DNA of 64,000 nucleotides from Asterias rubens (GCF_902459465.1 NC_047076.1:372001-436000); one strand, 5' to 3'; shown: positions 624 to 26,300, counted from the first letter of the stretch. Numbers and translations are program-made. The notes: generated from the letters alone by a model not told the origin.

Positions 624-1729
624 ATAATAATAGGAACGACAGTAAGAAACTTTCTTGTAGTTGTAAATTGGTCTCCATTGTCTATCTGTTCCCATTGTGT
701 TAAGTAGCGTTCTGTACCTTGGCTGTCTGACCATATAGCTCCTTTGATGTAGTGAAAGAGCAAATACATCAACTGCACAACAAATAAAAGAAAACAAAAG
801 GTACAAATGATTAATTTCTTTGGCTTCCCAACCCAAGTTTATTAAAGCCCCAAGGAAACACAACAAACACAAATTAAAGCTTGGAAGTTATTTGTCCACT
901 TATTGGATAATTTCCTTGAACAACTATTGTTAATTGGTTTGTTAATTGGTTTGTTTCTGTTGTTTGGCACTCCTTTCAAGGTCTGTTGGGACCTCTTGTT
1001 GAGCATCTATTATCATAAGAAAGTAACTGGATGGCTAACTCCTTTCTAACTCATCTCGCTACTTTGATCGTTGTCCTGGCTATAACATTCTCTCATTTTC
1101 AAGGTTTCGCCAATGTAGCCAACACAGTTACAAGTAATATGCTTCTAAAAAACTAAATAGATTTACACATGGTGCTACTGCAAACCTCCACTATTATACT
1201 CACAGTATGCAAAGATTAAAATACTACAGAAATATACAATACCAATGTGAATACTAATGTAATGATGTGAAATTATACATGCCATGTGAAGAGCAGTGTG
1301 CGATAGAACTCTAAAAATAATATTAGTAATTGTAATAAAGTGGAGGTTATTAAGAAATAAGGGATTTGGGGATTTTGCTGTTGAGGAGAGACGTATGATT
1401 GAGAGATTGGAATAACCAAGTTGACTTATCTACCGTACACTTTTTTAATCCCAACGTCCCCTACCCGCTTAACAAGAAGTGCTCCGCATTTAGGCCAACT
1501 TTGAAAACTTTACAATAAAACTCACCAAACTGTGTGAAACTGTTGTGAGTGTCCACACCATGGCCACATTCAGGAATGGCAGGCACAAGAAAAATAAATG
1601 CAAGGCATAAATCCCGATAAGGTAGGAGATCCACATTCCTCTGCTACTAAGCCATGAGTGGAAGTTAGACTCCATCACAACACCGGCTACTCCATTGGTG
1701 CCTCCATTCGTCTGCTCAGATATCTTCAT
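624..1729 (-). CDS. ORMDL: ORMDL (ORM1-like sphingolipid biosynthesis regulator), partial: coding exons 1729-1526 and 772-624; last exon not found in window
   Basis: Exon 1729-1526 reads MKISEQ...SRGMWISYLIGIYALHLFFLCLPFLNVAMVWTLTTVSHSL, then GTGAG. Exon 772-624 (CAG acceptor, GTAAGT donor) reads LMYLLFHYIKGAIWSDSQGTERYLTQWEQIDNGDQFTTTRKFLTVVPII. Both match the ORMDL pattern (SRGxW, WTLT, KG..., WEQxD.G.QFT..RKFL). Phases are compatible. The start Met could be 1729 or 1675. A 5'UTR acceptor lies at about 1819. Confidence 0.93.
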
Positions 1730-4856: not shown

Positions 4857-5328
4857 TCAAGCTCCCAGGTTATTACTTCTATTGTTAGCATCACTAAGGA
4901 ATTGGTAGACAACTCATTGTATTTATTTGTTATTTCAGAGCAAGTAAGATGTCTTCACTACAAAAGCTTCCATCGATACAGTACGTCTAGTATCAAGCTC
5001 TCGGGTTATTACTTCTATTGTTAGCATCGTCAAGGAATTGGTAGAGAACTCATTGTATTTATTTGTTATTTCAGAGCAAGTAAGATGTCTTCACTACAAA
5101 AGCTTCCATCGGATACAGTACGTCTAGTATCAAGCTCTCGGGTTATTACTTCTATTGTTAGCATCGTCAAGGAATTGGTAGAGAACTCATTGTATTTATT
5201 TGTTATTTCAGAGCAAGTAAGATGTCTTCACTACAAAAGCTTCCATCGGATACAGTACGTCTAGTATCAAGCTCCCAGGTTATTACTTCTATAGTTAGCA
5301 TCGTTAAGGAATTGGTAGAGAACTCATT
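4857..5328 (+). repeat. ~137-bp tandem duplication (3.4 copies) of the acceptor plus most of the first PMS1 coding exon
   Basis: Unit TGTATTTATTTGTTATTTCAG|AGCAAGTAAGATGTCTTCA...GAGAACTCAT. ATGs at 4949, 5085 and 5222 (spacing 136 and 137). Only the last copy continues to ...[11 protein letters not shown] and a GTAAGT donor. Confidence 0.95.
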
Positions 5329-8300
5329 AGATGCACAAAGTGACAACATTGAAGTCAAATTGGTAAGTAGAAAATCTTTTCTGACAGCTTTTTAGAGATG
5401 AGGGTTTTTCAGACTTTTTTCCTGAACTAAAAAGGATGCCATCGTTCGATCGGCTGACCAAATTCTCGCTGGGGTGGATTTTACACAGAGATAAGCCAGG
5501 TTCATACTTCCTGCGAATACAAATGCAATGCGAATTTGACGTGAATTTGAAGTCACATCCTTCCTTTCGGAGCGATATTCGCAAGTAAGTTGAACGGAGT
5601 TGAATTGTTGCAAATTTGTGGCGTCAACATTCGCTTTGCCTTCGCATGCGCAAGAAGTATGAATTAGGCTTTAAGACTAGTCTAATCTTAGACTTGCCTT
5701 AAGTTTTTAACAACTTCTCATAGACCTACATGTATCTATGAAATCAACCCTTGAGAATGTTGGGATTGTGATGCTGCCAAACTCAAAGCAGTAGCACTCA
5801 CACTAGAAGGATGGGCTGAGGTGGGAGTACCAGTGATTCAAGCTGGGTACAAGGAGGAGACCACGGGCAAATGCTTATAGATGTCTACTAGACAGAGACT
5901 TATTTATAAATGCCTGCCTTATAAAGCTGTTATTTCTTCCATGTATAAAATACCCTGCAGTCGATTTCACGAAACGCTAGGATTAATCCTAAGTCGAGTT
6001 GGGCATATAACCCATCCTAACTCAAAGTGGTTTATTTATAGCTGTGGTGCCATGGGTTAACTCAAGGCATGGCATCATGAATGATCAGTCAGATTTTGGT
6101 GTTTGAAGATTTTCTTGGATTTTGTGCCAACAATGATTTCATTTGGGGGCTTTAATTTTTAAAGAACTTTGTCATGTGATGTTCTATCATCGAACTTCTA
6201 CTCAAGATCACATCCATTCCTGATCACCAGTGAGTGTAGAAAGTAGAAACAGAAAGTAAGTTGTGAACCTTGATTATATATCAAAAGTATTTTGAAGAAT
6301 AAAATCTATAGATCAGAAACAAAAAAATGAGTCATCAGTAAGTGTCAAAACAGTGAGTTTTTTTTAATTAAAAGCAAAGTGAAATAAACGGTGCATTTGT
6401 CGGATCAAAAATTCAGTCATTAAAATAATACTAGTCCCTAAAATAAACTATGAATTTAAAATGTATTAAATAAAATGAATATTTTAGTTTAAAAATGATG
6501 CTTAGGAGGCATGTTATGTAAAGATTTAACTTAAAATGACCTTGGCAAAAATGGAACTTAAGCTATTTAATATCTTACTGAACATAATGAATCAATCTTC
6601 CTCATAAATAAAATCAAATCAAATTAACGAATAGGTGTCATGGCCGAGTGGTTTAAAGCATCAAAATCAAGTTTTGATGTTTAAGTCATGGGGTGTCGGT
6701 TTGATTCCCAGTCATGACAAATGTGTCCTTTAAAAGCAACACACTTCACTAATCACTATCAATCTTTTTTTCTGGCCAGGGTACCTGGGAGGGTAGAGGT
6801 TGATATTGTGTATAAAAAAGCCTTTGGAGCGCTGCAGTTGCCCAGGTTGTATACTCCTATAGTACCTGGGAGGGTAGAGGTTGATATTGTGTATGAAAAA
6901 GCCTTTGGAGCGCTGCAGTTGCCCAGGTTGTATACTCCTATAGTACTGGGAGGGTAGAGGTTGATAGTGTGTATGAAAAAGCCTTTGGAGCGCTGCAGTT
7001 GCCCAGGTTGTATACTCCTATAGTACCTGGGAGGGTAGAGGTTGATATTGTGTATGAAAAAGCCTTTGGAGCGCTGCAGTTGCCCAGGTTGTATACTCCT
7101 ATAGTACCTGGGAGGGTAGAGGTTGATAGTGTGTATGAAAAAGCCTTTGGAGCGCTGCAGTTGCCCAGGTTGTATACTCCTATAGTACCTGGGAGGGTAG
7201 AGGTTGATATTGTTTATGAAAAAGCCTTTGGAGCGCTGCAGTTGCCCAGGTTGTATACTCCTATAGTACCTGGGAGGGTAGAGGTTGATATTGTGTATGA
7301 AAAAGCCTTTGGAGCGCTGCAGTTGCCCAGGTTGTATACTCCTATAGTACCTGGGAGGGTAGAGGTTGATATTGTGTATGAAAAAGCCTTTGGAGCGCTG
7401 CAGTTGCCCAGGTTGTATACTCCTATAGTACCTGGGAGGGTAGGGGTTGATATTGTGTATGAAAAAGCCTTTGGAGCGCTGCAGTTGCCCAGGTTGTATA
7501 CTCCTCAGGGAGCTAAAAAAGGAATATTTTTGGCCCAATGAGCAGGGCACTAATTTAAAGCGCATTGATAGAGTAGTAAAATGCTAGTCTAATTATTATT
7601 ATTAAATTATTATTGTTAAGGATACTGATTTAATGTTATTTTTTGATTATTTAGTGTCTTAGTATTATATTTTAAAAAACGTAAACAAATTAAGTCTCAA
7701 CTTTTTGGGGGAATGTTGCTTTCTTGGTTGCCCTCTGAAGAACTGCTGCAATTGACCATTCCCAGTCAACAAAATATTGGACACTAGGCCGTAATATAGG
7801 ATATTCAGACTTAATATTAGGACACTTGTCCTTCTACTTTACTGGATTCTGTTGTCATACATCTTTGTGTAGTATGGCAAAGCAATATCAATCAAGCGCT
7901 GTAGGTCAGCTGTAACTTCTGGCTTAGACTCTTGGCTTTGGACCTGAGGCTTCATAAAACAAGTGCCATTTCGGAAATTCTTAAAACCGTCACTATCGTT
8001 AATGATATTATTTAATGTCTGACTGACTGTCCAGTCCTTAACAACGTCAACTCCAGCATCCCAGCTAAGTAACTCATCACTGTACGGAATCCCTAATGTC
8101 TTACAGAAACCAGAAAGTATGGTTGCTGGATCATTCACAAGATCATCTGCATCTAAGATAACTGGGTCTGGGTCTAAACCTTTCTCTTTTACATAGGAAT
8201 ATAAATCATAGGTTTCTTTGAAACTACCTCCTGGGGGAAGTATTTCTGGAGGTTGTTGGTCAAATTCCACTTCATCTAGTGATATATTGGTCTTATTGTC

Positions 8301-11300
8301 TGACTGTACTGACATAAGATTCATCATTTCAACTACTAGTTTCTTCCAAGATGGAAAGACCTTGGCTGGGTTACGGATGAGGAAAGCATGACGGTAGCCA
8401 GAATCTGGAAGATACTCAAATTTCCCATCTGGACAAAAAGATATTTCTTTGGCAAAAATAATCTTCTTATCAGGGTACCCTGTCTCCATGTGGTGTTTTA
8501 GCCATTTATAAGTACAGATTGAGCTATGGAAACCAGACCCAGGATCTTTCTGTAGTTCTTCTGGTGTTTTTTCGGTGATTACTTCAGGCTCTGGTGGCAT
8601 CTCCATGTTATTGTTTGATACAATTTGTCTCTCTGGTCCAAAGAATCTTGCCGTGCTGTACATCTCAAATAGCATTTTAGAATCGGGAAGTTTGTCCATA
8701 CACTTCAAGAAAGCGGATGAGACGGTGCGAGGACACGCCCAGAGAATGACTTTGATTTGGTCGGCCATGATGACAGTCAGTTGTCTTCCTTTTTGTCTTG
8801 GACTGGAAAGCAAGATTCTGCACTGAGAAGAAGAAATGAGTAAAGGCAAAAAAGAAAATTGCAAAGAAAATGAAACATTACACTTGTGTAATGTATGTAC
8901 AGTAAACAAAGGAAATTAAATTTTGATTAAATATTTAAATGCTGGAAGCATTTAATTGGCTACAATTGGAGGTAGAGGACATTTGACATCAATGTTTAAT
9001 CTGTGTTGATAACCTATGGTTGATAAGATAATCTAAAGTGAAGGACAGGCACAGCTTAGCTCATTTTGAAATTAGAGTGAACAAATTTCTTTTCAACTCA
9101 AAAGTTCATATTTCGTTGTCTTTGGTTACATTGACAATTCAACAGAACATATTTGACCCTGTGAATATGGAGAAGCAGACCATACTATGGAAACCACGGC
9201 TTCGGCTACAGATTCAGCTCAGGCTAGCTTGGCCAGGCAGTTGTTTTGACAATTACGCTATAAACTTTGTGTATGTGCTCGGGGCTTCATACGAGAGAAC
9301 GGAGCCGAACGGAGCCAAAGCCGAAGCCATGGATTTGAAAAGGGCCTATTGAACACACCACACTGCCTTGTTTGACCTCTACTACCCAACCCTTGTAGCT
9401 CAAAAGATCTTGCAATCTTCAATAAAACCCAAAGGACTGTGTAAAGAAATTTGAAACTGATATAACGGTAACACTTTATGAGTCATGTCAGTGAAATGAA
9501 AAGAAGACTGTAGGTGTTCCTTCATGCATGCTTTATATGCTTTTAAGAAGGCTCTGCTAGGGCAGAAAGTGAAGCCAGTAAAAATAACATTTTGCATTTA
9601 TATCTGGTATTATTCTGATTGGTAAAGCAATCTGCAATCAGTGAGTTATTTTTTTCATGCTGTGTTTTTCAATCAAACTAGCTTTCATTTTATCTTACAT
9701 ACAGGCATGATATTCTTCCTACTTAAGTCTGATTAATGATTTGTTGTGCTCTTGGAAAAATCAGAAAAATGTGATAAATAGCCCGAAAAGTATATTAAAC
9801 CCTCATTATGAACTTGTGTTCAAACATGATTTTTTAACTTTTTTCCCAGGGACTATATATCATGTCTGTTTCAGTTGTACATTTACTTGCAAAGAATGAG
9901 AAATACATACCAGTTTGTCCTTCACTGTGAGAACCTCCACCAGTCACTTAACACTACCGATTGGAAGGCCAAGACTTTCCAATGCAAGCAAATAGTACTT
10001 GGTGAGATTAGATGCTGTTACCAAACTCAATTGAGTCTTATGCATTGGATTGTGGATGGCAAAAAGTACTTGGTGACTTTAGACGCTGTTACCAAACTTA
10101 ATTGAGTCTTTTGAAATGCATTGGATCGTGAAAGGAGTGCCAACTCATCCTATATCCATTCATTTACATAACAGATAAAGTTATGTAATAGTTAAACACA
10201 GAGCTTAGCAGGTAAGAGATAGCAAAGCTGACGTTTCAGATAATTTTGAGGATTGAAAACCTTTTAAAAAAAAACTACTATGCAGTAGTAGAATTTACAG
10301 CAAGACAAGATTTACCTAGGAAGTAATAAGACTGTGAATATTTGTATTCCCCCTGGATAGGATGCTAGTCTATCATAGGTTGCTCCCCAGCTCTAACAGA
10401 CAGGTACCCATTTGTACTCCTGGTTTGAGATATCACAATAGTGATAAAGTGTCTTGCTCAAGGACACAGGTGTTGCGATTGACCGGGTCAAGATTCAAAC
10501 CCACATTCTGTAAATTACAGAACTTAAGTCCACCGCCCTAGACCGCTCGGCTACGTGTCATCACAACTCGATATGTTCTGTTATTAGAATCACTTTTAAG
10601 AAAACCAACATTAATAAATTTTAATTAATCTTAAGATTCCCTGAGTCACTGACGTTTAATGATGTATGAAACCATGGAGGATTCTTCCTCCATGTTGAAA
10701 CTTTGCATTGTCTTGAAGATAAGAAGTACATGTAACTATAGCAGGCCTTGAACTTCAAAAGTGCGGCACCAGTGACATCAATGTAAGTAATCTTTATAGA
10801 ATGTTGGCTGGTAGCCTGTTTCTGCTAAGCAATATTAACCAGTGCTTAGCAAGTTTTGTGCCTACAGATTTTATTAAACTGGAGTCTGGTATGTCACTGG
10901 TGAAACTATTTGTACAAATCGAGCAGCAAATAAATGATAGAGTGGCGTTTGAAGCTATGCATACATTTATAAGAAGATGAGACTTGAGGGTCGACCATTT
11001 GTAAAATATATTTTTTTATTTTTTAAAGTTTTTTTTTAAAATAAAAAAAAATAAAAAAATCGGTGCGGCCGCCAAGATCAAGGCAGGGGGGGACGTGCAA
11101 CATGTTAATTATTTTACTTGGCCTTATGGGAGGAGTGTTGGCTCTGAAAAGAGCTGGTGTGGTGTTAACATTTCAAAGAGTAGACTCGCTCTTTTTCAGG
11201 AGAAAGATGAGCCAGATTAGCAGAGTACACTTTTCGAACTGTCAAGACCACACCGCCTTTTTCAAAGCCATCACTCCTTCCAAACAAGTTTTTACATTCC

Positions 11301-14300
11301 ACACACAAGTTTACTATTTGTAGTTTTATCTTATTGACATTAACAAAATTGAAATCCTGTACATTTGCAGAATTCATTAGGAAAACAAGATTGAAGTCAA
11401 AAAGCAAATACTTCAGAAGCAATATTAAGTTTTTGTTATATAGTGGTTTTTTAGTGTCTTTTTATAAAATTACTTCTAAATGTACCAAGTCTTGTTTTAT
11501 TTTTAAACAATACAAAATCTATACTATTCAAAGCGTAACCATTGGATTGAAAATTAGAAGGTCCAGTGGCATGGCATCTTTGTGGTTCCAACACGGTTGT
11601 GTCGTTACAGATGTCGGGTTGCAAGTCTACAAAACCCTGAACCGAACTCCCTCTTACGAGTTGTCTGATTGGCTGGAGTCACGAGCGATATCTCCTTACA
11701 TGTGTGGTTGTCTGGTTTTGATATGGGCCACCTGTTGGTCTAAGGCGGGGAAGCTGTAGGCTGCACACAGAGCCACCCCTTTAGGTTTGAAGTGGGTGGC
11801 AACCTCGGACTCCCATTAACATTCCAGAGTGACTCATTGATGTTTCACAGAGTGGTAAATGGCATTGTGTATATACCATTTTGTACAGGGGGGTTTAATT
11901 TCGCGTGTTTAATAAAAAACATTAGGCTTTAATACATGCATCTGTTACATATGTGTTTATTACAATTAAGTCACTCATGTAGGCCTACCCAACTTTCCAG
12001 CATTTTTTAAACGCATCAAACAGCAACCCATTGTTGTGAAACTTTATTTGTTCCATTTAACTCTGCACCATTAGTGGTACAGTCCATAATGTCATCCCTC
12101 ACACACAACGTATACACGCAAAAGTTGAAACATTTTCAAAAAGAAAGTAAATACATTACTGATTCTTTTCATATACATTGTAGAGGTTTTGCCAGTTAAA
12201 CCTACAAAAGAGTACATGAAATCACCATTTAAGAATAGTATGCTTTCATAGTTACGAACTTTGTGAAACATCAACGGCTGTTTTGAAGCTGTAAATGAAC
12301 ATTCCATTCAAAGTTCTGAAGCAACAAAATTGTTAGAATGCAGTTTGGTGAGGACTCAGGATGTAGATTTTGCCAAATCCGTTTTGTATTAAGCAATCGG
12401 CCGTCAGGTTTTCGAAAGAGCCCTCATGTGCAGCTGAATCGGGTACTTTTTACGAATTTCTCCATACAAAATTAACCAAACTGGCCTACAAACCCTTAAA
12501 TTAACAAGGCAAATGTTTTCTGAAAGTGAATTAAGTGAGAGGATGTAGGGGTAGCTGGCATACAAACCCTCAAAATAACTAGGCAAATGTTTTCTGAAAG
12601 TGAATTAAGTGAGAGAATGTAGGAGTAGTTATTAAAGACCAATAAAATTACCGTTTCTATTATTTTAGTTTGTACAGGGTTTACATGAGAATTAATTGAT
12701 ATGAGAATAAACTTAACATAATTAGGCTGACGCTCTGTTACTCCCAAAAGCGGTGGTAAAAACAGTAGATTAGATGTTGCACAGCATGCTCCGAAAACTC
12801 GCTTTATTTGGTGCTCAGACAACTGTGTATGCGTCGTTGGACGTACGCTCAATAAATCACGATGAATGGGGCCTTAGATTCTAAAATCGTGTACACGTCA
12901 TTGGAAACAAAGCAAAAATCATTCAACAGTTATAGCAACCAATCATTAAATATATTTATTTTCAATACAATTTTGCAGAAATTGACTTTGTCGTTAAAGT
13001 CCATACCAACTGGCGCGTTTTTTTTTTGTATCTGCTGTATACCAGAACTTCTTCGAAGCTTCCTTTTCAGTCAGATAAACTCTGCGGCTATTAGTGGCTG
13101 TGATTATGAGTTTGTTTTAAAAGAGGGTACCTCTTTCATACAAGCCTTTTTAGTCGGATATCTCCTCTGCTATTAGCAGCGGTGATAATTATTGAAGGGG
13201 GAGACCAGACTTAGACCACTCAAATCCGTGGCTATCGGTGACTATGGATTTGTTGCTAAGGGAACCAAATACCACTGCTGATTCCAAATTCAGCGTGTTA
13301 TACATTGTCCGATTGGCCCATCTCCATATAAATTAACCAAACTGGACGTACAGACCCTCAAAATAACAAGGCAAATGTTTCACAAAGTTCGTAACTATAA
13401 TGAAAGCAGTTTGGGCGGGACTCAGGATGTACATTTTGCCAAGTGTAACTGAATTATACCAAATGTGCTCAACACAATAAAATAAGTTGTCATTGGAGCA
13501 GTGTACGCGCTATATTTTTAGTCGACTAAGCATTATTACCCTTACAGTCATCTTAGCTGGGAAATACTCAGTGCAGTGGATAAAATTGACACAATGACAA
13601 AAGCCTTAAGAGTTAAAACTATGCGTAAAAGAGGTGAAACATAATCTACATTACGGATAATGCGTTGGCCCGCTCGATCAACACTAAAACGGGTTATTAT
13701 TATAATTATAATATTACGAAATACCCTACATATCATGCCAAGTACCACCATTGCCAAGAATACCCATCCCCAATATTAAAGCTCAATTCCAGAAACAAAC
13801 ACCAATTCCTTTAGTTGGAGAACGCAAGAGAGAAGGTGAGGAGGGGAGGGACGTTTCACAACTAAGTTGTGCATGCTCAACAATAAATTTTTATCAAAAT
13901 ACAACATTAATGACAAATTTCCATACCGATTATAAATACAATTTCTAATCCAATATTACGAAATGATTATTACCTGTAAGAATACCTCCCTTTCCCCCAC
14001 ATTACCTTTTACAACATTTGTATACTAGAATCCTCCTCATCTAGCGGGGTGCAGCGCGAAGCGCGGCATCCCGCTAGTAACTTCTTAAACTTGTTACATT
14101 TTCAATGAGTGCTCTATGTTTTATATAAAAAATAAAAATATGTTCAAGTCTTTCCCACTTTTCAGGAATCTCATGCAATTTAACATTGAGTTGTCAAAAG
14201 GAAGACAAATGTTGTTGTTTTGTAAAGAAGGGCTTTGTAAAGTAACTTCAGCTTAGGAATCCAACTTATAGTCAATAATTATTCCTTTTGAATAATGGTC

Positions 14301-17300
14301 CATTGATGACCAGTACAATTTCTCTTGTGCTGAAATGATGATTTGGTTTTGAATAGTGACACATTTTGTGTAGAATTTTCCCTGCTTTACAGGGGAAATC
14401 ATTCACTGGGGTCATGTTTGTTTTAACTTGTTTTAAAATGTAAATAGATAAATAAAACAAATAGTTTTGTAAATGTTACTCTGCTTATTGTAGTAAATTG
14501 AGTATAAACATGCCATACCCTCTATCTCAACTACAGTACTAAACATGCCATACCCTCTATCTCAACTACAGTACTAAACATGACATACCCTCTATCTCAA
14601 CTACAGTACTAAACATGCCATACCCTCTATCTCAACTACAGTACTAAACATGCCATACCCTCTATCTCAACTACAGTACTAAACATGCCATACCCTCTAT
14701 CTCAACTACAGTACTAAACATGCCATACCCTCTATCTCAACTACAGTACTAAACATGCCTCACCCTCTATCTCAACTACAGTACTAAACATGCCTCACCC
14801 TCTATCTCAACTACAGTACTAAACATGCCATACCCTCTATCTCAACTACAGTACTAAACATGCCATACCCTCTATCTCAACTACAGTACTAAACATGCCA
14901 TACCCTCTATCTCAACTACAGTACTAAACATGCCATACCCTCTATCTCAACTACAGTACTAAACATGCCATACCCTCTATCTCAACTACAGTACTAAATA
15001 TGCCATACCCTCTATCTCAACTACAGTACTAAACATGCCATACCCTCTATCTCAACTACAGTACTAAACATGCCATACCCTCTATCTCAACTACAGTACT
15101 AAACATGCCATACCCTCTATCTCAACTACAGTACTAAATATGCCATACCCTCTATCTCAACTACAGTACTAAACATGCCATACCCTCTATCTCAACTACA
15201 GTACTAAACATGCCATACCCTCTATCTCAACTACAGTACTAAATATGCCATACCCTCTATCTCAACTACAGTACTAAACATGCCATACCCTCCATCTCAA
15301 CTACAGTACTAAACATGCCATACCCTCTATCTCAACTACAGTACTAAACATGCCATACCCTCTATCTCAACTACAGTACTCATACAAAAATATACCTTGT
15401 TATAAGTGTACATTGCATACCAAGTATTAGACTTATTTTACTTAATTCTTTCTTGACCCTAGCAGAGTCTTAGCAGAGTCTTTCTTGACCCTAGCAGAGT
15501 CTTTCTTGACCCTAGCAGAGTCTTTCTTGACCCTAGCAGAGTCTTTCTTGACTCTTGCAGAGTCTTTCTTTCTTGACCCTAGAAGAGTCTTTCTTGACCC
15601 TAGCAGAGTCTTTCTTGACCCTAGCAGAGTCTTTCTTGACCCTAGCAGAGTCTTTCTTGACCCTAGCAGAGTCTTTCTTAACCCTAGTAGAGCTTTTCTG
15701 GCTCCTAGCAGAGGCTTTTCTAGGGTCAAAAACGTCAAGCCATTAACTAATTATTTTGCATTCACCATGGTCCTTTTGGTTTGCATTAGTTTGCAAGAGC
15801 TGATGCTATTTTTTCATTTAATTCTTTTGTCATACATCTTTGTGAAGTATGGCATTGACAAATCAATCAGGCGCTGTATGTCAGCTGACACTTCTGGTTT
15901 AGACTCTTGGCTTTGGACCTGAGGCTTCAAGAAACAAGTGCCACTTCGGAAATTCTTAAAGCTTTGACTAAATTGAATGATATTGTGCAGTGGTTCACTG
16001 ACTGTCCAGTCCTTAACAAAGTCAACCCCAGCATCCCAGTTAAGTAACTCATCACTGTATGGAATCCCTAATGTCTTACAGAAACCAGACAGCATGGTTG
16101 CTGGATTATTTACAAGATCATCTGCATCTAAGATAACTGGGTCTGGGTCTAAACCTTTCTCTTTTACGTAGGAATATAAATCATAGGTTTCTTTAAAACC
16201 ACCTCCTTCTGGAAATATCTCCGAGGGCATTTTGTCAAGGTCCACTTCATCTAGTGACATATTGGTATTACCTTTACGATTCACCATTTCAACTATTAGT
16301 TTCTTCCAAGATGGAAAGACCCTGGCTGGGTTACGTATGAGAAAGGCATGGCGATAGCCAGAATCTGGAAGATACTCAAATTTCCCATCGGCACAATAAG
16401 ACATTTCTTTGGCAAAAATAATCTTCTTATCAGGGTATCCTGTCTCCATGTGGTGTTTTAGCCATTTATAAGTACAGATTGAACTGTCGAAACCACACCC
16501 GGGATCCTTCAGAATTTCTTCCGGGGTCTTATCAGTGATCACACCAGGTAAAGGGGAAATATCAATCATTTTGTTTGGGCCAAAGAATCTTGCCGTGCTG
16601 TACATCTCAAACAGCATCTTAGAATCTGGAACTTTGTCCATACACTTCAATAAAGCTGAAGAGATGCTTCGAGGACTCGTCCAGAGAATGACTTTGATTT
16701 GGTCGGAATTATCAATCATTTTGACTTTGATTTGGTCGGCCATACTTCAATAAAGCTGAAGAGATGCTTCGAGGACTCACCCAGAGAATGACTTTGATTT
16801 GGTGTGTATTAACACCCAGTTTCTTGACCTGAGGCTGATGATGTTCCTCTAAATTGAAAAGGAAAAAGAAAAAGTAACAATATAAAAACCCAATGTATGC
16901 CTGGAATGCATCTATTGCCCCTGGTCTTGGCCTTGGTGCCCCCTTCAGAAGTTTCCCATAGACTTTAAGATTTTCCAATGGAAGTGCTCGTTTCAAAATG
17001 GAAATGGCTTTGCTCTCTCAAAGATAACATTCCAGGCCTGATTGTATGCTTGACCCTTTTACATATGTCACATCTATTGACTCTGACTAGACTGTCTTGA
17101 GGTTAATTTTGCATCCAGGGGGTGGGGGGGGGGGGTGGTCAAGAATATTAATTTTGGATTTATCCTTACAGAGATGTGTGTTAGCTCTGTATGTACTTCT
17201 AAAGTACTTTCCCCAGGTCTGTGAAAACAAATCCACAACGTATTAGAATCTTGAACTTTGTCCATACAAAGTTGTGGGTTAGAATCCCATCCGAGTAATA

Positions 17301-20300
17301 TGCCTGTCAGGCCCTAAACTCAGCCCAAAGAACTCAATCAATTTTTAAATCAACTCAAACAGCTCAGGTTATCCCATTTTTACTGATTTTCTTAATCCCA
17401 ATTTTACTGGCTTTTGTTATTACTCCATTGTGGTTCATCTGTTTGTTTTTTTTGTTTTTGGTTGTGTGTTTTTAATGGATGTGTATTTTTCCCCCTTTAA
17501 ATTTCTTCGTCCTATTTAAAAACGTTTTTTTTTTTTTAAGTTTTCAAAATGTATGTGTGCTTGGATCTAGTGCTTTTTTTAAATGAATGTGCAATGTTTT
17601 TCTGTGTAAATTTGTAATATTTTATCTTAAGTTCACTTCTGTAGTTTGTTATTAGCTGGGATCCATGGGAGATCAGTGAGTTTTTCTCACTGAATGGATT
17701 TCCCAGGATAAACAAGAAATGGGATAAATAAATAAATAAATAAACTGTTTTTCGGCATTTTTCTTCAAATTATGTCCTTTTGGTTAGGCCAAATAAAATA
17801 AATAACCAGTTGATCGTCCCCTGCCGCATCCTTTTTGGGGGCCGCATCCTTTTTTTAACTATGTGTTATTTTTCGATTTTTGTATAAAAAAAATATATAA
17901 AAAAAGGACTGGCCTAGGAGTTAAACAATATTAGTGAATGCCTACCAGCAAATCTTTTAGTGTAATCCGACCCTGTTAATAATAGTGTTAACACAGGTCC
18001 TCATGCAAGAAGAATTGGTGGCCTGTTCGATTTGAAATACTAAGTGGTCATCTTGAAAAAACATAATAAAATAAAAAGGCCCTCATCCTCCTCTTTTTTG
18101 AAAAATCCAGACGATCAACTGGTATTTTTTTTTTTTTTTTTGCGTTTGTAAGCAGTTTGCAACAGCTAATTCCATTTTCACATCTTTAATTGTACCTATA
18201 AATTTCATTATGTATTGAAAGTTTATCGTACATTTTGTCTTTCTCTGTTTCATCACAAACTGCTTTGGTCTTGATGAAATGGCGGTATGTAAAACATTTT
18301 TGTATGTATGTATATTGGAGCACATAACCTGCTATTCCTGGCAACATATTATGCGACCAATATTTCTCTTGAAAAAGTTTTAAAGATCATCATCTTTTTC
18401 ACTTACATTCAACTAGCTGTGTTTACTCAGATTCTCATTGTCCGTCAGTCCAAAAGTTTTTTCTCCTTCTTCCTTTTGAGAGCAGTCTCGAGATGATTGC
18501 AGAAAACAGTGGCTTCTTCAAACTGATTACAAACCAAACTTATAAAGGTGGTTTAACAGTACGTAAATGCAAAGTGTTGTAGTGGTGTACCGTTATGTTG
18601 GATGGAACAATAGCTAATCTTGCTCCAAGGTCAGACACGAAGCCACAGAACGAATACGCAGACTAAAAGGTGTAGGAACACTGAATACAAAGCAGGATTG
18701 TGTGGAGGCTCTGGATGGGAGTGTGTTAGTGCACAGGTGTATGAGCTGGTTTTTGTGTCAGAAGCAGAGTGTACTCCCTCAAAGGCTAAATAACAACACA
18801 TACAAGAAGTCAAATAGGGTCCCGTAAACGTTGAGAACAATTAAGTGAAGTAAAAAAAAAAAAGTCACCTCAATCCACTAAAATAGTCCTGGCTGTTTTT
18901 CTCCCTACGCCCAGGCTGTAGGTAAAAAGCAGGACAGTTCTTTTCAGAGCTGAGAAGTCTCCCAAATTCACCCCAAAACGTACTTCACAGTAGTATAATA
19001 TAACAAGATAAGTTCTCATAAGAACACCCCAGGAGTTGTAAATATACTTATGATGTTACCACAAACCAAATAAAAATACACCTATAACAGGATCATTGAA
19101 TACAAAGCAGAATGGTTCTGAATATGGGGAAATGTACGTACGTGTAGTACCATCCAGCTGGGGGGGGGGTGCATAGTATACACAAAACACAATTCTGTAG
19201 TTCCTGTTAAACCGGGTTCATATGTCCTGCAAATTTGCTCTTTTTTTTATGCGAATTAATTTTTTTTTTATGCGAATTAATTGTGTGATATCAAAATTTG
19301 TATCGCATCCGCATTCGCAGGAAGTATGAATCGGGCTTACCTCCAACATTTAAAGTTTTATATCCTACTTGTTCTTTTTTGTTGGTATTTTTGGGGGGGT
19401 TTTTTTTTTTTGGGGGGGGGCTTGGTATTTATACAATACACCTGTAGTTGTTGCTACTAAAAATTAAAAATCAAAATCAAGACTTTGGTTGTAGCCATAT
19501 TGCCAGGTACTGTCTGTTTACTGATTGGCCTTTACTTAATTCAAGTTTGACCTCGTTTGTATGATCTCAACCCCCCATGGTTAGGAAGGTTCTAAACTTT
19601 CTGCTAGTGCTAGGTCATCAATTGTGTTGCAGACTCAGTTTGTTGGGTTGATGGAATCTCTGAAGTGTACAGATAATGTATGTTTATAATATAATAACAA
19701 TACACAGATTTTATAGTGCATGAAATTTGTGCTACATTTAACAAGGATTAGGAAACATCAACTTTTGCGAGTAGTTCATCAACTAGTGAGTGCCAATGAC
19801 AGGAAATTGTGAACTCTAATAATTATATAAACAAAATTAATTAAATCCACCATATACATAAACTGACAAACCTGTGAAAGTTTGAGACCCATCGGCCATG
19901 TGGGTCACACAAAAATAGTGGAAAACCAATTTGCACATTTTTGCATGACATCCTTAAAAAACAAAAAAATACGCTCACTGAGCGGTAAACCCCAATTCAG
20001 AAATTAGGTTATTTATATCTCATCAAATATGACATTTCAAGGGATGTTTTTTACTATCATCATCATTAGACCATATTAGTTTTATGTTTATCTGTAATCT
20101 TTATGATTTGTTTCTTGCCAATTTTGTAATGTTCCTTGAAGGTTTTAATAGACAATTCCATTAAACCTTGTTTTTTATTGGACTAATCACTACTGGGACT
20201 TTGAGCAAACAAAATACAAAGTGCTACTATTAAATTCCACCACATTCTTGTTTATAGATAGCTCATTATGTACCAGTATACAATTGTTGCACGCTGTGGC

Positions 20301-23300
20301 GGGATCCATGGCGTTTTGTTCACCGAAGGGGGGAAATGGCACCTGAGGCGAAACCGAGGGTACCATTTGCCACCGAGGGTGTACAAAACCCATGGACCCC
20401 AGTCACAGCGTGCAACAATTGTTTTGTTACACCTTTGTATAATTGTTGTTCCTCTTCTCGAAGTTCTGTTTTCATCTTCAAACATTATTACGACTGACTA
20501 TTCATTGTTTAATTAGCAGACGAACAAGAAACAATTCCCTTGAACCCGCGGTTGTTTCGTACACGGCGCTGGAAATCGACCAACGCCGGGAACGATCACG
20601 GTGATGTACACCGGTTGTACATCACTTTTCATGTTACCCGGCCCGTCAAGCCATGTAACATGCATCTTTGTTGCGCGTCACATGATTGGTTCTCGACCAA
20701 TCAAACTTCACAGTTTGTTACCGAGGTATAACAAGACTGTATGCTTCATTTTTAAAAAGGCAAGGGCACCAAGGCGTTTTCTACTTGGCAAAGGGCACCC
20801 TACATGTATGAGGAAGTTGTAAATTTCTTCGGGAGCATTTTAAGAGCACCAAGGTATTGATGAGGGGGCATGGAGGCAATCGCCTTCATTGCCACAGTGA
20901 AGTATTAGGTCTGATGTACAATGCATCAATCATGTATCAATGTGACAGTTCACAATGATAGGTTTAAAAGGGGTATTTATTGATGTTAAAGTGTCAAAAC
21001 ATTTCATTTCATTCTTTTTTTATGCATCTCTTTGTAGTATGGCATAGCGCTATCAGTGTGTCTCTGAACATATTCACATAAGTCTGCTGACCATTCGGCT
21101 TCAGATCTAGGCATTTGACTTTTGACATTTGGCTTCAAAAAACAAGTGCTGTTTCGAAAATTCTCAAAGCTTAGATCATGTTTAATGATATCATACAGTG
21201 GTTGACTGATTGACCAGTCCTTAACAACGTCAACTCCAGCATCCCAGTTGAGTAACTCATCACTGTATGGAATCCCTAATGTCTTACAGAAACCAGACAG
21301 TATGGTTGCTGGATCATTTACAAGATCATCTGCATCTAAGATAACTGGGTCTGGGTCTAAACCTTTCTCTTTTACATAGGAATATAAATCATACATTGCT
21401 TTAAAAACCTCCTCATGTGGAAAGAACGTAGTGTCATCTATCGGTCGCGCACTATACCTATCAGAGAAATTGTCTTTGAATGTTATCGATTGTTGCATCC
21501 ATGAATGAAGAACTTTAGTTGGATTCCTAATGAGGAAAGCATGGCGACATCCAGAGTCTGGAAGATATTCAAACTTCCCTTCAGCACTGTAACATATCTC
21601 TTTAAAGATAACCACCTTCTTGTCAGGGTATCCTGTCTCCATGTGGTGTTTTAGCCATTTATAGGTACAGATTGAACTGTCGAAACCACACCCGGGATCC
21701 TTCAGAATTTCTTCCTGGGTCTTATCTGTGATCAAACCTGGTAGAGGTGTTAGTCGCTCGTTAATGTTGGCAGGCGCAACCCTGTCAGGACCAAAGTACT
21801 GCGCAGTAGAGAACATCTCAAACACCATCTTAGATTCTGAAACTTTGTCCATACACTTCAAGAAAGCGGATGAGACGGTTCGAGGACACGCCCAGAGAAT
21901 GACTTTGGTTCGATCGGCCATCTGTCTTGTTTTGTTACGAGGTTCTGGAATGAGAAAATAAAGAAACCAATATCATAAGGAAATTAATTAACCTTTTAAC
22001 GCATACATTGTCATTAATTGCTATGTTGTGTTCACAGAGGGAAAATTCATTCAAAAGATAAGCCCCCCCCCCCCCACAAAAAAGAAAAAAGGAAAAAAAA
22101 AACATACCAAAACTATTCTGTTTTTGAAGCAGCAATATGGAAAGAGTCTAGCAAGATGCAAAGTGCAGTTAAAGGAACATTACAAAATTGTTTTTTTGCT
22201 AACAAAATAGTTGCTGGCAATGTAAGCACCATAAACTGACAAACCTAGGTCACATTAAAAAATAGTGACATTGATGCAAAAACAAAAATGAATAAAACGC
22301 TCACTGAGCATTAAACTCCAAACAGGAAATTAGTTTGATTTATTTCTCATCAAAGATTCTGTCAGTCACTATAGAGGGGTACAAAGATTTATTGATAATT
22401 TAGAAAACTGCTTAACTGTCTAAAATAGTAATCAAAAACACTGGAATTTAAGCATTAGCCACGGAAATACCTCACAAAAATCACAGACGCCCTAAAAAAA
22501 ACACAGGAGAGTTTATGAAGACTTACATGTATAAATGTCCACTCAAAATGTTTACCTTCTTGTGAAATCCAAACAAGTTGACTGGTGTGACAGGTGCAAT
22601 AGAGGTGGGATACAGGTGCAATAGAGGTGTGATTCAAGTTGACTGGTGCAGGTTTACTGATGAGAGAGAAAACTACTGACATGAACTGACCAGCTTGCAA
22701 TACTCAGAATGATTCTTCAAAATCCAAAACAGTTCCTTTTAAAAGGACTCCTCCTACACAAAAACAAACACAAAGTCACAAGATCGAACTATGCCCTCCT
22801 TAAATACGTCAAACCAAATTCAGAAATGGTGGTCTGATGTTATGTATTTATTCTATAGTTTATATCAAAGGTCTTCAAACTTTTAGTTAACTCAGTCTAA
22901 ATATAGAACCTCACACCACCATTTCTTGATTTCATTTGACTTGATGAATTAGGTCACATTGGCAGGTTTAAAAATTTAATTTTTTTTGGTAATTATTTGT
23001 ATAAATGCTTATCATTTGCCTAACGTGAAAAAAATCAGGTATTGTTTCAACTTTGAGTGCATGTTTTTAGCTTGTGCCAAGCGTCACTATCTTGTGTAGG
23101 CACTGCATGGGATTCATCGCGCCTCGATTGACGTCACGAACAGCGCCCTCTTGGGTCGGGCTTATTTTCAAATTTGTAAATAACATGGAAACTAATTTTT
23201 TTAAACCTTAGTTAATTGTTTATTCATATTCCACTCATCAAAACACATAGTTTAGTGACAAAAGCTTTATTTTGACAAAATACCACTTCCAGATGACTTT

Positions 23301-26300
23301 AATGGTCTACAATTTAACTCCAGCAGAGGCGTATCTGTTGACTCAATTGAGCAAGAATATTTTCAGGATATTTTGGAAGATAAATTACCATGATATGGTA
23401 GAAACTGTTTTTTAAAAATTAACACTTTTAATACAAAACACATAAATTAAACTTTGGGTTAGAAACCTACATGTACTGCTGCAGGTTTTTATAGTATAAG
23501 GCATTTTGAGAAACATTTCACCTTTCCGTGAAGAAATTTGTTTAATTTAATGGAAACAAAATATAAGGTTTTTTGCCCGAAAATTTGAATCTAAGAAGTG
23601 TTACCCGGTAAGGTTTTGCAGGTTGTGTATTCCTATGAGGAACTATTCTTACTAAGATGGATATATTCACTGAGTGGAGCATAGTAAGAATAGTTCCTCA
23701 TAGATTCACTCCTGATTATGGGAGGATATCTCAATAATGCAACCACCTTTTTAAATGAAGTTTTTACATGTTAGTTCTCAAGAATCTTCTACTCATGTAT
23801 TGAAATCTGAAATCTGCTTACCAAAGGTTTTTATTGATAACCAAAGGTATGCATTCCCTTACTGCATTCCTTTAAATGTACAAGCTTTGAGTATAATTCC
23901 TCTATTTTATTGAAAATCTTTCAGAGAAGATAATTATTATTTAACCCCCTCCTCTCTTTTTAAACACTTGCAGTTAACATATAAGTTGTAGCACGAGTTA
24001 TTGTTTTTTTTATAAACTACATATATCAATTTTTTCTCCCCTTCTGCAGGAAAATCATGGCTTTGAAAAGTTGAAAGTTCGAGACAATGGGACTGGAATT
24101 AAAGCAGAAGATGCTGTGTACATGGCACAGAGACACTACACCTCTAAGATATCCCAGCATGGGGATCTAGAATCATTAGAAACGTATGGTTTCCGTGGTG
24201 AGGCTTTGGGCTCACTATGTGCAATGTCAGATGTTACCATAGTAACAAAGACATCTGCAGATGACTTTAGTCATATGTATGTACTGGATCATGAAGGATA
24301 TATTATATCATCGAAACCATCTCATCTTGGAAATGGTAAATATCACATTCAGTTGTCAAAGTATCAAAGTCACATTACAATTGTTATAGTTGAGGTAAGA
24401 GAGAGAGAGAGCGAGAGATGTAAATCAACAAATCAACAAATTCTAAAAGCTAATGCACCTCAAAATTGTCATCTTTTTACAGGATTTTACTTTTTTTAGT
24501 GACTAGCTAGCACGACCTTGGGTCCATTTCACAAAGAGTTAGGACCTAGGAGATATTAAAAACTAAGTTAGGATGAGTAACTCGACCAAACTCAAGATAA
24601 AACTAGTCTTAACTCTTTGTGAAATCCAGCCGAGTTGCTTGTCATGTCACTAGTCCACCAGTTATTAGACTAAATTTAACCAATGATGTTGTTATCCTGA
24701 CCAATTCTGTACATTTAAACAGTTTTATCTTTTTGATTTTTTTCAACAAATGATCATCAGGAACTACAGTAACTGCTACCCAAATATTCAAAAGTGTACC
24801 GGTGCGTAAGCAGTATTACTCAAGCATCAAGAGACGTAGGGATGAACTCAAGAAAGTGGAGGAATTATTGAGGAGTTTTGGAGCAATCTGTCCCAATGTA
24901 CGCCTTTCCCTCTACCATAACAAAAGCAATATCTGGCAGAAGAATAAAGTAGCCAATCATAAGGTGGCTTTAATAAACATGTGGGGTTCAAGTGTGATGT
25001 CACAGATGCAACATGTTCAGCGATTGGTTGATGAGGATGGAAATGGTCAAGTAAGTCTTATTTTTTCTAGATGCACTGTATGAGACATATAAAATGTCTC
25101 GACCACTTTTTATCCTATTCATGTGTGTTATGTTGTCATTTAGCCTCTTCCAGCGGCTAGGGTCAAAACGTCAGGCCATTAGCAATTTTGTGCATATACC
25201 GTTGGTCATTTTAGTTTGTAAGCAGTTTGCAACAGCTAATTCCATTTTCTAATTTTGTGTCCTTGTTAGAATTATTGAAAGTAAACCATAATATTAGGGA
25301 AGACTGGGGATTAAAACTAAAATAGAATTAAAGATTTATCCTTAAGTAAGAACCACAGTCACTACCACAAACTTTCAAGTCAAAGAGACTACAACCAAAG
25401 AAAATGAATAATATATTTGAAAAAGTTATTGAGAGTTTATTCTTGCCCAAGAGTCATCTAATCGGGCATTATATTCTTTCTACTTTTAAGTTGGAAATCA
25501 GATTTAAAAGTCTGATTTTCAATTTTTCAGAAAACTAAATTTGTTTTATTAAACAGCCTGAAAAGTCTTCATGGTCTATAATAGCCACATGTAGGACTAC
25601 TCAAACTTGTCCTACTTTTTCCCAAGAGCCAAATGTCACCCTGTGTAATATTTTGTAGATGAAGGAAGTTTCTAAATAAAAATTGTCTATGTTGTTGTCT
25701 TTTTATAGATCCAAGTTGAAGGCTTCTTACCTCGTCCATTAGTCAACAGCCAATCAGTGACAAGAGCAATGCCAGACAGGTGTTGGATTGCCATTAATAA
25801 TCGACCAATCACCTTCAAGGAAATTGAAAAGGTAACCATGGTTTATTCTTATGACTTTATGTACATTTGTGATTTAGACAAGATTTCTTCTAGATGTTGT
25901 AAAAACAGCTTTTAAGTGCCTAACCACTATGATTAAATCAGAAATGTCGTCTAATGGTATGTTCCTACTTCCTATTTTCACACATTCTAAGACAGTCAGA
26001 TTTATGTTTTGGCATTGTTCTGGATAAATGTCTCAATGGAAAATTATTTTCATTTTACTCAGTCAGTTACTGTTTAGTTTTATTACATGATGTTCTACTA
26101 AGACGCCTTCCTGAACTCATACCTATCTTACCTCTTATTGTTTTCTCATTCTAAGATGGTGAAGCTAGCATACTGCCAAGCAATAAAGCAAGAAACTTCA
26201 TCCATACGCTACCTGACAATGTTTCTCAGCATTACCGTTCCTTCACACTGTGTGGATGTGAACCTGGAACCCAATAAAACCAAAGTGATGCTCCAGAATA

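What the first reader, a model, noticed from the sequence alone, without database searches (positions are those of the whole stretch)
7839..21921. Cluster of three intronless, bacterial-like sulfotransferase genes hidden antisense in one PMS1 intron
Seen: three intact 305-309-aa ORFs on the minus strand lie within the 18,687-bp intron 5363-24049. Each has a 5'UTR acceptor but no coding introns. Established: W-x-x-PR-S/T-x-S and R-N-P-x5-S resemble the two PAPS-binding motifs of sulfotransferases. This domain type is known mainly from bacteria and from the N-terminus of plant 'BCAT-like' proteins, is often mis-annotated as an aminotransferase, and has no known animal substrate that I am aware of. 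Inference: a lineage-specific, possibly horizontally acquired or retroposed sulfation module has expanded inside a DNA-repair gene. If the host is a sea star, sulfated steroids and saponins are obvious candidate products. The antisense nesting also implies transcriptional interference with PMS1.
Basis: partly seen in the sequence, partly recalled or inferred. Interest (0 to 1): 0.75.

Follow-up and report, generated by a model that had tools for sequence, protein, structure and literature searches.

The report
Three sulfotransferase genes inside PMS1 intron
Three intact, tandemly duplicated genes for soluble PAPS-type sulfotransferases (Pfam PF19798) lie antisense in the first intron of the sea-star PMS1 gene. 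They are ordinary members of a family of about 45 genes found in all echinoderm classes, not a hidden or recently imported bacterial module.

Summary
Three intact minus-strand ORFs (A 7839-8768, B 15814-16743, C 21004-21921; 309, 309 and 305 aa) lie inside an 18,687-bp GT..AG intron (5363-24049). The host is a MutL homologue with an HMG box, which identifies it as PMS1.

All three ORFs match Pfam PF19798 (Sulfotransfer_5). A confident model (pLDDT 92.6) matches only PAPS-dependent sulfotransferases (Z 14 to 9.7). A family profile aligns the conserved Arg25, Glu46, Lys112, Arg137 and Ser145 with the CurM sulfotransferase domain.

Gene B is transcribed and has a 1,558-bp intron in its 5'UTR. Gene A is very probably transcribed, in other samples. 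Support for gene C is weak.

The genome, very probably Asterias rubens, holds about 45 such loci, about 38 of them uninterrupted ORFs. The family occurs in all five echinoderm classes, and the echinoderm sequences form one clade apart from fungi and bacteria.

The same intron holds the same trio in A. amurensis and a single copy in Patiria miniata. The nesting is therefore ancient, and the trio arose by local tandem duplication. Related genomes already annotate these genes. The substrate is unknown. Sulfated steroids and saponins are only a hypothesis, and canonical SULT genes also exist in this genome. No data bear on interference with PMS1.

The parts
7839..8768 (-). Gene A: single-exon CDS, 309 aa, PF19798 sulfotransferase
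   Evidence: ORF. Pfam E 3.2e-10. The A. amurensis ortholog P0002 is 98% identical with dN/dS 0.10. Runs X19-X22 hold 54-63% of the stretch 7400-10400 but were not listed among the holders of gene B's stretch.
8818..8819 (-). Predicted 5'UTR splice acceptor (AG) of gene A; not tested with RNA
   Evidence: A polypyrimidine tract followed by CAG, conserved in A. amurensis. The neighbouring AG at 8823-8824 is not conserved.
15814..16743 (-). Gene B: single-exon CDS, 309 aa, PF19798 sulfotransferase
   Evidence: ORF. Pfam E 2.7e-10. AF2 model pLDDT 92.6. RNA-run contigs with 0 mismatches cover 16000-16773.
16744..16848 (-). Gene B: 5'UTR part of exon 2. It contains an out-of-frame relic of the ancestral CDS start.
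   Evidence: X1 records 2 and 3 are contiguous across it. The alignment with A. amurensis shows a 10-bp deletion of the old ATG and a duplication of about 96 bp that supplies the new start.
16849..18406 (-). Gene B: 5'UTR intron, 1,558 bp, GT..AG
   Evidence: X1 record 3 joins 16848 to 18407 with 0 mismatches. GTAAGT starts at 18406 and AG lies at 16850-16849.
18407..18566 (-). Gene B: non-coding exon 1 (minimum extent)
   Evidence: X1 record 3, positions 101-260.
21004..21921 (-). Gene C: single-exon CDS, 305 aa, PF19798 (also a weak Sulfotransfer_1 match)
   Evidence: ORF. Pfam. The A. amurensis ortholog P0005 has dN/dS 0.56. RNA support is thin: depth of about 1-3 in X13, less in X12, none in X1 or X7.
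21945..21946 (-). Predicted 5'UTR splice acceptor (AG) of gene C; not tested with RNA
   Evidence: A polypyrimidine tract followed by CAG, 24 nt upstream of the ATG, conserved in A. amurensis.
5222..5362 (+). PMS1 coding exon 1 (47 codons)
   Evidence: ORF with a MutL-type N-terminus. HATPase_c_3 profile positions 4-25. GTAAGT at 5363. 98% identical to the A. amurensis exon and 72% to the Patiria exon.
5363..24049 (+). PMS1 intron 1, 18,687 bp, which holds genes A, B and C
   Evidence: GT..AG with the frame kept. The orthologous intron holds 3 copies in A. amurensis and 1 copy in P. miniata.
24050..24335 (+). PMS1 exon 2
   Evidence: Matches PMS2, MLH1 and MutL N-terminal domains at residues 67-151, E 3.4e-17. 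HATPase_c_3 profile positions 37-97.
28937..29062 (+). HMG-box exon of the host gene. The HMG box marks PMS1 among the MutL homologues.
   Evidence: PF00505 hit at G000:C16:400937-401062, with translation. DNA_mis_repair domain at 26150-26302.

Best explanation
Genes A, B and C are three functional paralogues that encode soluble, cytosolic PAPS-dependent O-sulfotransferases. They belong to the PF19798 (Sulfotransfer_5) branch of the sulfotransferase superfamily, the branch nearest by sequence to the CurM and olefin-synthase sulfotransferase domains.

Proposed mechanism (inferred from the alignment with characterised enzymes): the strand-loop-helix P24-R25-S/T-x-S-S binds the 5'-phosphosulfate. 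R137 and S145, at the start of the following helix, bind the 3'-phosphate. The near-invariant E46 acts as general base on an acceptor hydroxyl, and K112 stabilises the transferred sulfuryl group.

The proteins have no signal peptide or membrane anchor. The paralogues differ most in two loops, at residues about 57-80 and 150-180. The acceptors are therefore most likely small hydroxylated metabolites, possibly different for each paralogue.

One ancestral gene already sat antisense in PMS1 intron 1 before the Asterias and Patiria lineages split. It was tandemly duplicated to three copies before the split between this species and A. amurensis. The nesting is a tolerated accident of location, shared with other family members that sit in introns of unrelated genes, and not a regulatory device.
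For: Pfam PF19798 above the cut-off for all three. The AF2 model has pLDDT 92.6 and pTM 0.91. All 50 top PDB matches are PAPS sulfotransferases in both Foldseek and VIA-align (Z 14.0 for 4gox, 13.0 for 4gbm, 12.5 for TPST1; aligned over residues 9-305).

The family profile hits CurM ST by sequence at E 2.1e-12. It aligns the PRS motif, the Glu, the Lys and the R-x-P-x5-S motif with the corresponding CurM residues. Motif residues are invariant or nearly so across 20 and 128 homologues, and they fall on the expected strand-to-helix junctions of the model.

Gene B gives a spliced transcript. Gene A's stretch is held by runs that were not listed among the holders of B's stretch, and the reverse also holds. 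Selection is purifying for A (dN/dS 0.10) and among the paralogues (0.29-0.42).

The trio lies in the same order in the same intron in A. amurensis, and one copy lies there in Patiria. The PMS1-nested clade has 98% SH-aLRT support. Only the CDS is alignable between the paralogues, not their flanks. Other members are nested antisense in a TPR gene and in a HIG_1_N gene.
Against: No enzyme of PF19798 from any animal has been assayed, and I found no paper that does so. Catalytic roles are inferred from alignment, and my memory of the CurM and TPST literature was not checked against a paper here. TM-scores to solved structures are modest (0.35-0.48).

Gene B evolves with dN/dS of about 1.15 between the two Asterias species and has a remodelled 5' end, so its constraint may be relaxed. 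Gene C has only trace RNA support. Transcription of gene A is inferred from k-mer shares, not from laid reads.
Confidence: 0.8

Rival explanations
1. The cluster is a recent, lineage-specific acquisition. On this reading a bacterial gene arrived by horizontal transfer, or a retrocopy inserted into the PMS1 intron, and it then expanded.
For: The CDS has no introns. The domain family is abundant in bacteria.
Against: About 45 loci sit on 15 contigs of this genome. The family occurs in asteroids, ophiuroids, crinoids, echinoids and holothuroids. All 60 echinoderm rows form one clade (99% SH-aLRT) apart from fungi and bacteria, which are only 21-25% identical and about 60 aa shorter. The orthologous Patiria intron carries a copy. 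Gene B has a spliced 5'UTR. GC content is not distinct from the flanks. Paralogue dS values of 0.35-0.82 compare with ortholog dS of 0.03-0.08.
Confidence: 0.03
2. The family entered the echinoderm stem lineage, or an earlier animal ancestor, once, by ancient horizontal transfer or retroposition. That would explain why nearly every member has a single-exon CDS. This is compatible with the best explanation.
For: About 38 of 45 loci in this genome are uninterrupted ORFs, and all gene models examined in other echinoderms are single-exon. The distribution outside echinoderms is patchy: cnidarians, a chiton, some fungi, plants as a fusion protein, and bacteria.
Against: The tree does not place echinoderms inside a bacterial clade, and the branches are long. 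Presence in several eukaryotic groups also fits vertical descent with losses. Hemichordates and other animals were not surveyed systematically.
Confidence: 0.2
3. The enzymes are general xenobiotic or dietary-toxin conjugating sulfotransferases (phase II detoxification), not biosynthetic enzymes for sea-star sulfated steroids or saponins.
For: Large, tandemly expanding, fast-diverging families of soluble enzymes are typical of detoxification genes. dN/dS is raised for B and C. The paralogues appear in different samples.
Against: The genome also has clusters of canonical PF00685 SULT genes that could do this job. Nothing here distinguishes the two roles.
Confidence: 0.3
4. Antisense transcription of the nested genes regulates PMS1 by transcriptional interference.
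For: Gene B is transcribed antisense inside PMS1 intron 1. The arrangement is conserved from Asterias to Patiria.
Against: There are no expression data on PMS1. Other family members sit in introns of unrelated genes or between genes, so nesting looks incidental. Conservation is also expected simply because a gene inside an intron is hard to move.
Confidence: 0.08
5. One or more of the three ORFs is a decaying copy without function.
For: B has dN/dS of about 1.15 and a rearranged start. C has almost no RNA support in the four runs laid.
Against: All three ORFs are intact in two species, and every motif residue is kept. B is the copy with direct transcript evidence. Paralogue dN/dS is 0.29-0.42.
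Confidence: 0.1

Closest known systems
Pfam PF19798 (Sulfotransfer_5), including the N-terminal domain of Arabidopsis BCAT-like proteins 1 and 2 (Q8W0Z7, Q9ASR4)
   Same: All three proteins score above the Pfam cut-off. The Arabidopsis N-terminal domains (residues 3-240) are the best structural matches in AlphaFold/Swiss-Prot, with TM 0.61-0.62 and 21% identity. The automatic name 'BCAT-like protein' given to echinoderm homologues comes from these proteins.
   Different: The sea-star proteins are free-standing, about 305 aa, and have no aminotransferase domain. They carry two extra loops relative to the bacterial members of about 240 aa. I found no biochemical function on record for either group.
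CurM and olefin-synthase (OLS) sulfotransferase domains (PDB 4gbm, 4gox)
   Same: These are the nearest solved structures (Z 13-14) and the only ones found by sequence (E 2.1e-12 and 5.6e-9). The PRS-x-S loop, the Glu, the Lys and the R-x-P-x5-S motif all align.
   Different: CurM ST is a domain of a polyketide synthase that sulfates an ACP-bound beta-hydroxyacyl group to activate it for decarboxylative elimination. The sea-star proteins stand alone, share about 15% identity with it, and have no carrier-protein partner.
Animal cytosolic sulfotransferases (SULT1, SULT2; Pfam PF00685)
   Same: The fold, the PAPS-binding logic and the soluble nature are shared. The 3'-phosphate motif is similar, and gene C also gives a weak PF00685 match. 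Z is about 10 to SULT1E1 and SULT2A1.
   Different: This is a different Pfam family with Arg in place of Lys in the 5'-PSB loop. The aligned position suggests a Glu base where the SULTs use His (my memory). The genes have a single-exon CDS, whereas the canonical SULT clusters of this genome are multi-exon.
Tyrosylprotein sulfotransferases (TPST1, TPST2)
   Same: High structural rank (Z 11.4-12.5). An Arg-type PSB loop, and a Glu about 21 residues downstream as in TPST2 (Arg78 and Glu99, from memory).
   Different: TPSTs are Golgi type II membrane proteins that act on peptides. A, B and C have no signal or anchor sequence.

Membership tests
PAPS-dependent sulfotransferase superfamily | Sulfotransferase fold: a P-loop-like alpha/beta core with a central parallel sheet | tested here: met
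   The AF2 model has pLDDT 92.6. All 50 top PDB hits are PAPS sulfotransferases, with Z 14.0 to 9.7 over residues 9-305.
PAPS-dependent sulfotransferase superfamily | 5'-phosphosulfate-binding (PSB) strand-loop-helix motif | tested here: met
   P24-R25-S/T-x-S-S lies between strand 16-22 and helix 28-35. P24 and R25 are invariant. The motif aligns with the SPRSGST motif of CurM.
PAPS-dependent sulfotransferase superfamily | 3'-phosphate-binding motif: an Arg at the end of a strand and a Ser 8 residues later in the next helix | tested here: met
   R137 and S145 are invariant. They follow strand 130-136 and lie in helix 139-158. They align with the R-H-P-x5-S motif of CurM.
PAPS-dependent sulfotransferase superfamily | PAPS-dependent sulfuryl transfer activity | not testable with these tools
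   This needs a recombinant enzyme assay.
Pfam PF19798 Sulfotransfer_5 | Score above the curated gathering threshold (23.2 bits) | tested here: met
   40.2, 40.5 and 32.3 bits. However, only profile positions 138-198 of 226 are matched by the best stretch, so the echinoderm branch is divergent.
Canonical animal cytosolic SULT (PF00685) | Score above the PF00685 threshold with a Lys-type PSB loop | tested here: not met
   A and B have no PF00685 hit. C scores 22.9 bits against a cut-off of 22, below its own PF19798 score. The loop carries Arg, not Lys.
Host gene = PMS1 (MutL homologue with an HMG box) | GHKL ATPase, DNA_mis_repair domain and HMG box in one gene | tested here: met
   HATPase_c_3 in exons 1 and 2. 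DNA_mis_repair at 26150-26302. HMG box at 28937-29062. The A. amurensis and Patiria gene models of 1078 and 1049 aa carry the same three domains. No cDNA of this species was examined.
Horizontally transferred gene (recent) | Restricted to one lineage and nested within a donor clade in the tree | tested here: not met
   Present in all five echinoderm classes. The echinoderm sequences are monophyletic and separate from bacteria.

The most novel reading that the evidence does not exclude
The PF19798 radiation has about 45 loci in this sea star and dominates the 150 best of the 50%-identity clusters returned by the search. Every named cluster sampled among those was echinoderm. This radiation may be the unidentified enzyme set behind the phylum's hallmark sulfated small molecules: asterosaponins and polyhydroxysteroid sulfates in sea stars, sulfated triterpene glycosides in sea cucumbers, and sulfated sterols and pigments in brittle stars and crinoids. 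On this reading the PMS1-nested trio sulfates steroid or saponin intermediates, with each paralogue taking a different acceptor or position.
Probability: 0.2. Interest if true: 0.7.

Novelty: new member of a known kind. Interest (0 to 1): 0.35.

Why it matters
Taken alone, the locus is ordinary: three annotated-type members of a known Pfam family that happen to sit in an intron.

The useful result is the corrected picture of the family. A sulfotransferase family that automatic annotation calls 'aminotransferase-like' has diversified greatly in echinoderms. These animals are known for sulfated steroids and saponins, and I found no paper that names the sulfating enzymes. That gives a concrete, clonable candidate list (single-exon, about 300 aa, soluble) for assays.

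The locus also shows that a nested antisense gene can persist in the same intron from Asterias to Patiria, the two sea-star lineages compared, and duplicate there.

Tried and rejected
1. A single-sequence search of PDB gave only spurious pentatricopeptide-repeat hits driven by one 25-residue stretch. The family profile was needed to reach CurM ST.
2. Weak SecB, Trehalase and Mre11_C Pfam/NCBIfam hits are far below their cut-offs and were dismissed.
3. I considered the Renilla coelenterazine sulfotransferase as a possible characterised animal relative. The paper places it in Sulfotransfer_1, not PF19798, so I rejected it.
4. The fungal sulfotransferase ppzF appeared as a structural hit. I could not fetch its sequence or find a relevant paper, so its family membership is untested.
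5. Literature searches for PF19798, BCAT-like proteins in echinoderms, and sulfotransferases of asterosaponin biosynthesis found no functional study. One sea-cucumber proteomics paper lists a 'BCAT-like protein 1' under amino-acid metabolism.
6. In the laid reads, high depth at 16800-17400 and 18800-20800 comes from dispersed repeats that are 90-95% alike, not from the genes.
7. The first attempt at the gene A run search failed because the machine was busy and was repeated. Reads were laid on genes B and C, so A's transcript structure was not seen.
8. The scan's earlier notes held nothing on this family beyond the finding itself.


Full report
**Observation**

The window carries three intact minus-strand ORFs at the stated coordinates:
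- A at 7839-8768, 309 aa counted from its ATG. The listed ORF runs further upstream to a TTG.
- B at 15814-16743, 309 aa.
- C at 21004-21921, 305 aa.

tblastn with the three proteins finds no other copy in the 64 kb, only a short duplicated N-terminal fragment just upstream of B. The paralogues are 77% (A-B) and 63% (A-C, B-C) identical in protein. Only their coding parts align at the DNA level, at 84% and 75-76%. The flanks do not align.

**The host gene**

On the plus strand an ORF starting at 5222 encodes a MutL-type N-terminus and ends at a GTAAGT donor at 5363. A polypyrimidine-CAG acceptor ends at 24049, and the exon that follows continues the same GHKL ATPase domain:
- Exon 1 matches HATPase_c_3 profile positions 4-25 and exon 2 matches positions 37-97.
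- Exon 2 matches PMS2, MLH1 and MutL N-terminal structures at E 3.4e-17.

Downstream on the same strand lie a DNA_mis_repair segment (26150-26302) and an HMG box (28937-29062). A MutL homologue with an HMG box is PMS1.

I did not see a cDNA of this species. However, the gene models of A. amurensis (1078 aa) and Patiria miniata (1049 aa) carry the same domains and span the nested genes.

An ORMDL exon lies upstream at 1490-1729 on the minus strand, as in Patiria.

**Which organism**

- The genome has 417.6 Mb in 150 contigs.
- It encodes, at 100% identity, a protein that the databases name as Asterias rubens (P0025).
- The closest named orthologues of A, B and C are A. amurensis proteins at 98, 93-94 and 93% identity.

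The host is therefore a sea star, very probably A. rubens.

**What the proteins are**

All three match Pfam PF19798 (Sulfotransfer_5) above its threshold.

An AlphaFold2 model of B, built on 128 homologues, is confident (pLDDT 92.6, pTM 0.91).
- All 50 best Foldseek matches in the PDB are PAPS-dependent sulfotransferases.
- VIA-align gives Z 14.0 and 13.0 for the sulfotransferase domains of the Synechococcus olefin synthase and of CurM, 12.5 for TPST1, and about 10-11 for heparan-sulfate and cytosolic enzymes. The alignments span residues 9-305.
- In AlphaFold/Swiss-Prot the best matches are the N-terminal 240 residues of Arabidopsis BCAT-like proteins 1 and 2.

A profile of the family finds CurM ST by sequence alone (E 2.1e-12). 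That alignment pairs four family motifs with their counterparts in CurM:
- the P-R-S-x-S loop,
- a Glu 21 residues after the Arg,
- a Lys in a K-D/E motif,
- the R-x-P-x5-S motif.

R25, P24, R137, P139 and S145 are invariant in 20 echinoderm sequences. E46 and K112 are at least 90% conserved in 128 sequences. In the model the first motif lies between strand 16-22 and helix 28-35, and the second lies at the junction of strand 130-136 and helix 139-158. These are the positions of the 5'-PSB and 3'-PB elements.

From memory of the CurM and TPST2 literature, which I did not check here, the aligned Arg, Glu and Lys are the catalytic residues of those enzymes.

The N-termini run straight into the first strand with no hydrophobic leader. 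The proteins are therefore soluble and not Golgi-anchored.

**Expression**

Contigs from two runs of the same species (X1, X7) cover the laid part of B's CDS (16000-16743) and the exon sequence just upstream, to 16773, with no mismatch. One X1 contig joins 16848 directly to 18407.

The skipped 1,558 bp start with GTAAGT and end with AG on the minus strand. This proves a spliced mRNA with a non-coding first exon (at least 18407-18566) and an intron in the 5'UTR.

C has no contig in those runs, only about 1-3-fold read depth in the raw RNA run X13 and less in X12.

Four runs of one study hold 54-63% of the stretch 7400-10400 and were not listed among the holders of B's stretch. X1 and X2 hold B but almost none of A. 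Genomic DNA runs would hold both, so these are transcriptomes, and A and B are expressed in different samples.

The acceptor sites proposed for A and C are conserved in A. amurensis but remain predictions.

**Evolution**

The genome holds about 45 loci of this family on 15 contigs. About 38 of them match end to end as uninterrupted ORFs.

The family is widespread in echinoderms:
- Named homologues come from asteroids (Asterias, Patiria, Acanthaster), ophiuroids (Amphiura), crinoids (Anneissia, Antedon), echinoids (Strongylocentrotus, Lytechinus, Diadema) and holothuroids (Apostichopus, Holothuria).
- Of the 30 representatives that I looked up among the best 150 of 864 hits, every one that carries a name is echinoderm.

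Outside the phylum the family occurs in cnidarians, a chiton, some fungi, plants and many bacteria.

In a maximum-likelihood tree of 70 sequences:
- All 60 echinoderm rows form one clade (99% SH-aLRT) apart from the fungal and bacterial rows.
- A, B and C pair with their A. amurensis orthologues.
- The trio, plus a paralogue now sitting in a HIG_1_N gene intron, is sister to the Patiria gene that lies in PMS1 (98%).

tblastn places PMS1 exons 1 and 2 on either side of the three genes in A. amurensis and of the single gene in Patiria. The orthologous intron therefore carried the gene before these sea-star orders diverged.

Synonymous divergence is 0.35-0.82 between the paralogues and 0.03-0.08 between the orthologues. 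The triplication is thus several times older than the split of the two Asterias species.

dN/dS is 0.10 for A, 0.56 for C and about 1.15 for B between species, and 0.29-0.42 between paralogues. B also lost its ancestral ATG through a 10-bp deletion and now starts in a tandem duplicate of about 96 bp. Even so, it is the copy with direct transcript evidence.

Other family members also lie antisense in introns: a TPR gene in Acanthaster and a HIG_1_N gene in A. amurensis. Others lie in intergenic tandem arrays. Nesting is therefore not special to PMS1.

**Verdict on the interpretation**

Correct:
- the sulfotransferase call,
- the plant and bacterial resemblance,
- the mis-annotation,
- the gene structure (shown for B),
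- the nesting,
- the sea-star guess.

Not supported:
- That the genes are 'hidden'. Related genomes annotate them.
- That the cluster is lineage-specific or recently acquired or retroposed. An ancient transfer or retroposition at the root of the echinoderm family would explain the family-wide single-exon CDS. It is neither shown nor excluded here.

Untested:
- The steroid/saponin idea. It is reasonable, but it competes with a detoxification role, and this genome also has clusters of canonical multi-exon SULT genes.
- Interference with PMS1. Nothing here bears on it.

I found no published functional study of this family in animals. A sea-cucumber proteomics paper lists a protein under the misleading BCAT-like name as amino-acid metabolism.

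**Score**

The locus is a new member of a known kind and of modest interest. The family-level radiation is the more interesting lead.

Noticed in passing
window 4857-5328: A 137-bp unit is repeated 3.5 times (96% matches). It contains the PMS1 start codon and about the first 36 codons. The last copy continues into the real exon 1, so upstream copies may add out-of-frame ATGs to the PMS1 5'UTR. A. amurensis also has at least one extra partial copy (L001 20741-20803).
   Followed up: partly
window 16744-16848: The 5' end of gene B is remodelled relative to A. amurensis. A 10-bp deletion removed the ancestral ATG, and a tandem duplication of about 96 bp supplies the present start. The old copy is now an out-of-frame part of the 5'UTR.
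   Followed up: yes
window 6781-7505, 14501-15380, 15471-15718: Three minisatellite arrays: 81 bp x 9, 35 bp x 25 and 21 bp x 11.6. The last lies in or just after gene B's 3'UTR. The first creates the spurious 268-aa and 190-aa ORFs in the ORF list.
   Followed up: no
window 1490-1729 (-): An ORMDL exon (Pfam E 6.8e-11) lies upstream of PMS1 and divergent from it. The ORMDL-PMS1 synteny is the same as in Patiria miniata L002.
   Followed up: partly
L006 10001-20903 (Acanthaster planci): A PF19798 paralogue (P0024) lies 3 kb from a sulfatase gene (PF00884 and SGSH_C) on the same strand. This may be a sulfation/desulfation gene pair.
   Followed up: no
L007 1335-18471 (Patiria miniata); G000 C16 6.46-7.09 Mb, C11 11.61-11.71 Mb, C6 5.99-6.01 Mb, C1 10.19-10.20 and 10.97-10.98 Mb: Further tandem arrays of single-exon PF19798 genes occur outside any host intron, in Patiria and in this genome.
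   Followed up: no
window 16800-17400 and 18800-20800: Very high read and contig depth at 90-95% likeness, with many loose ends, marks dispersed repeats (transposon fragments) in the spacer between genes B and C.
   Followed up: no
G000 C7 18.43-18.48 Mb and 21.15-21.19 Mb: Clusters of canonical multi-exon Sulfotransfer_1 (PF00685) genes. Several of them show in-frame stops in the six-frame matches.
   Followed up: no
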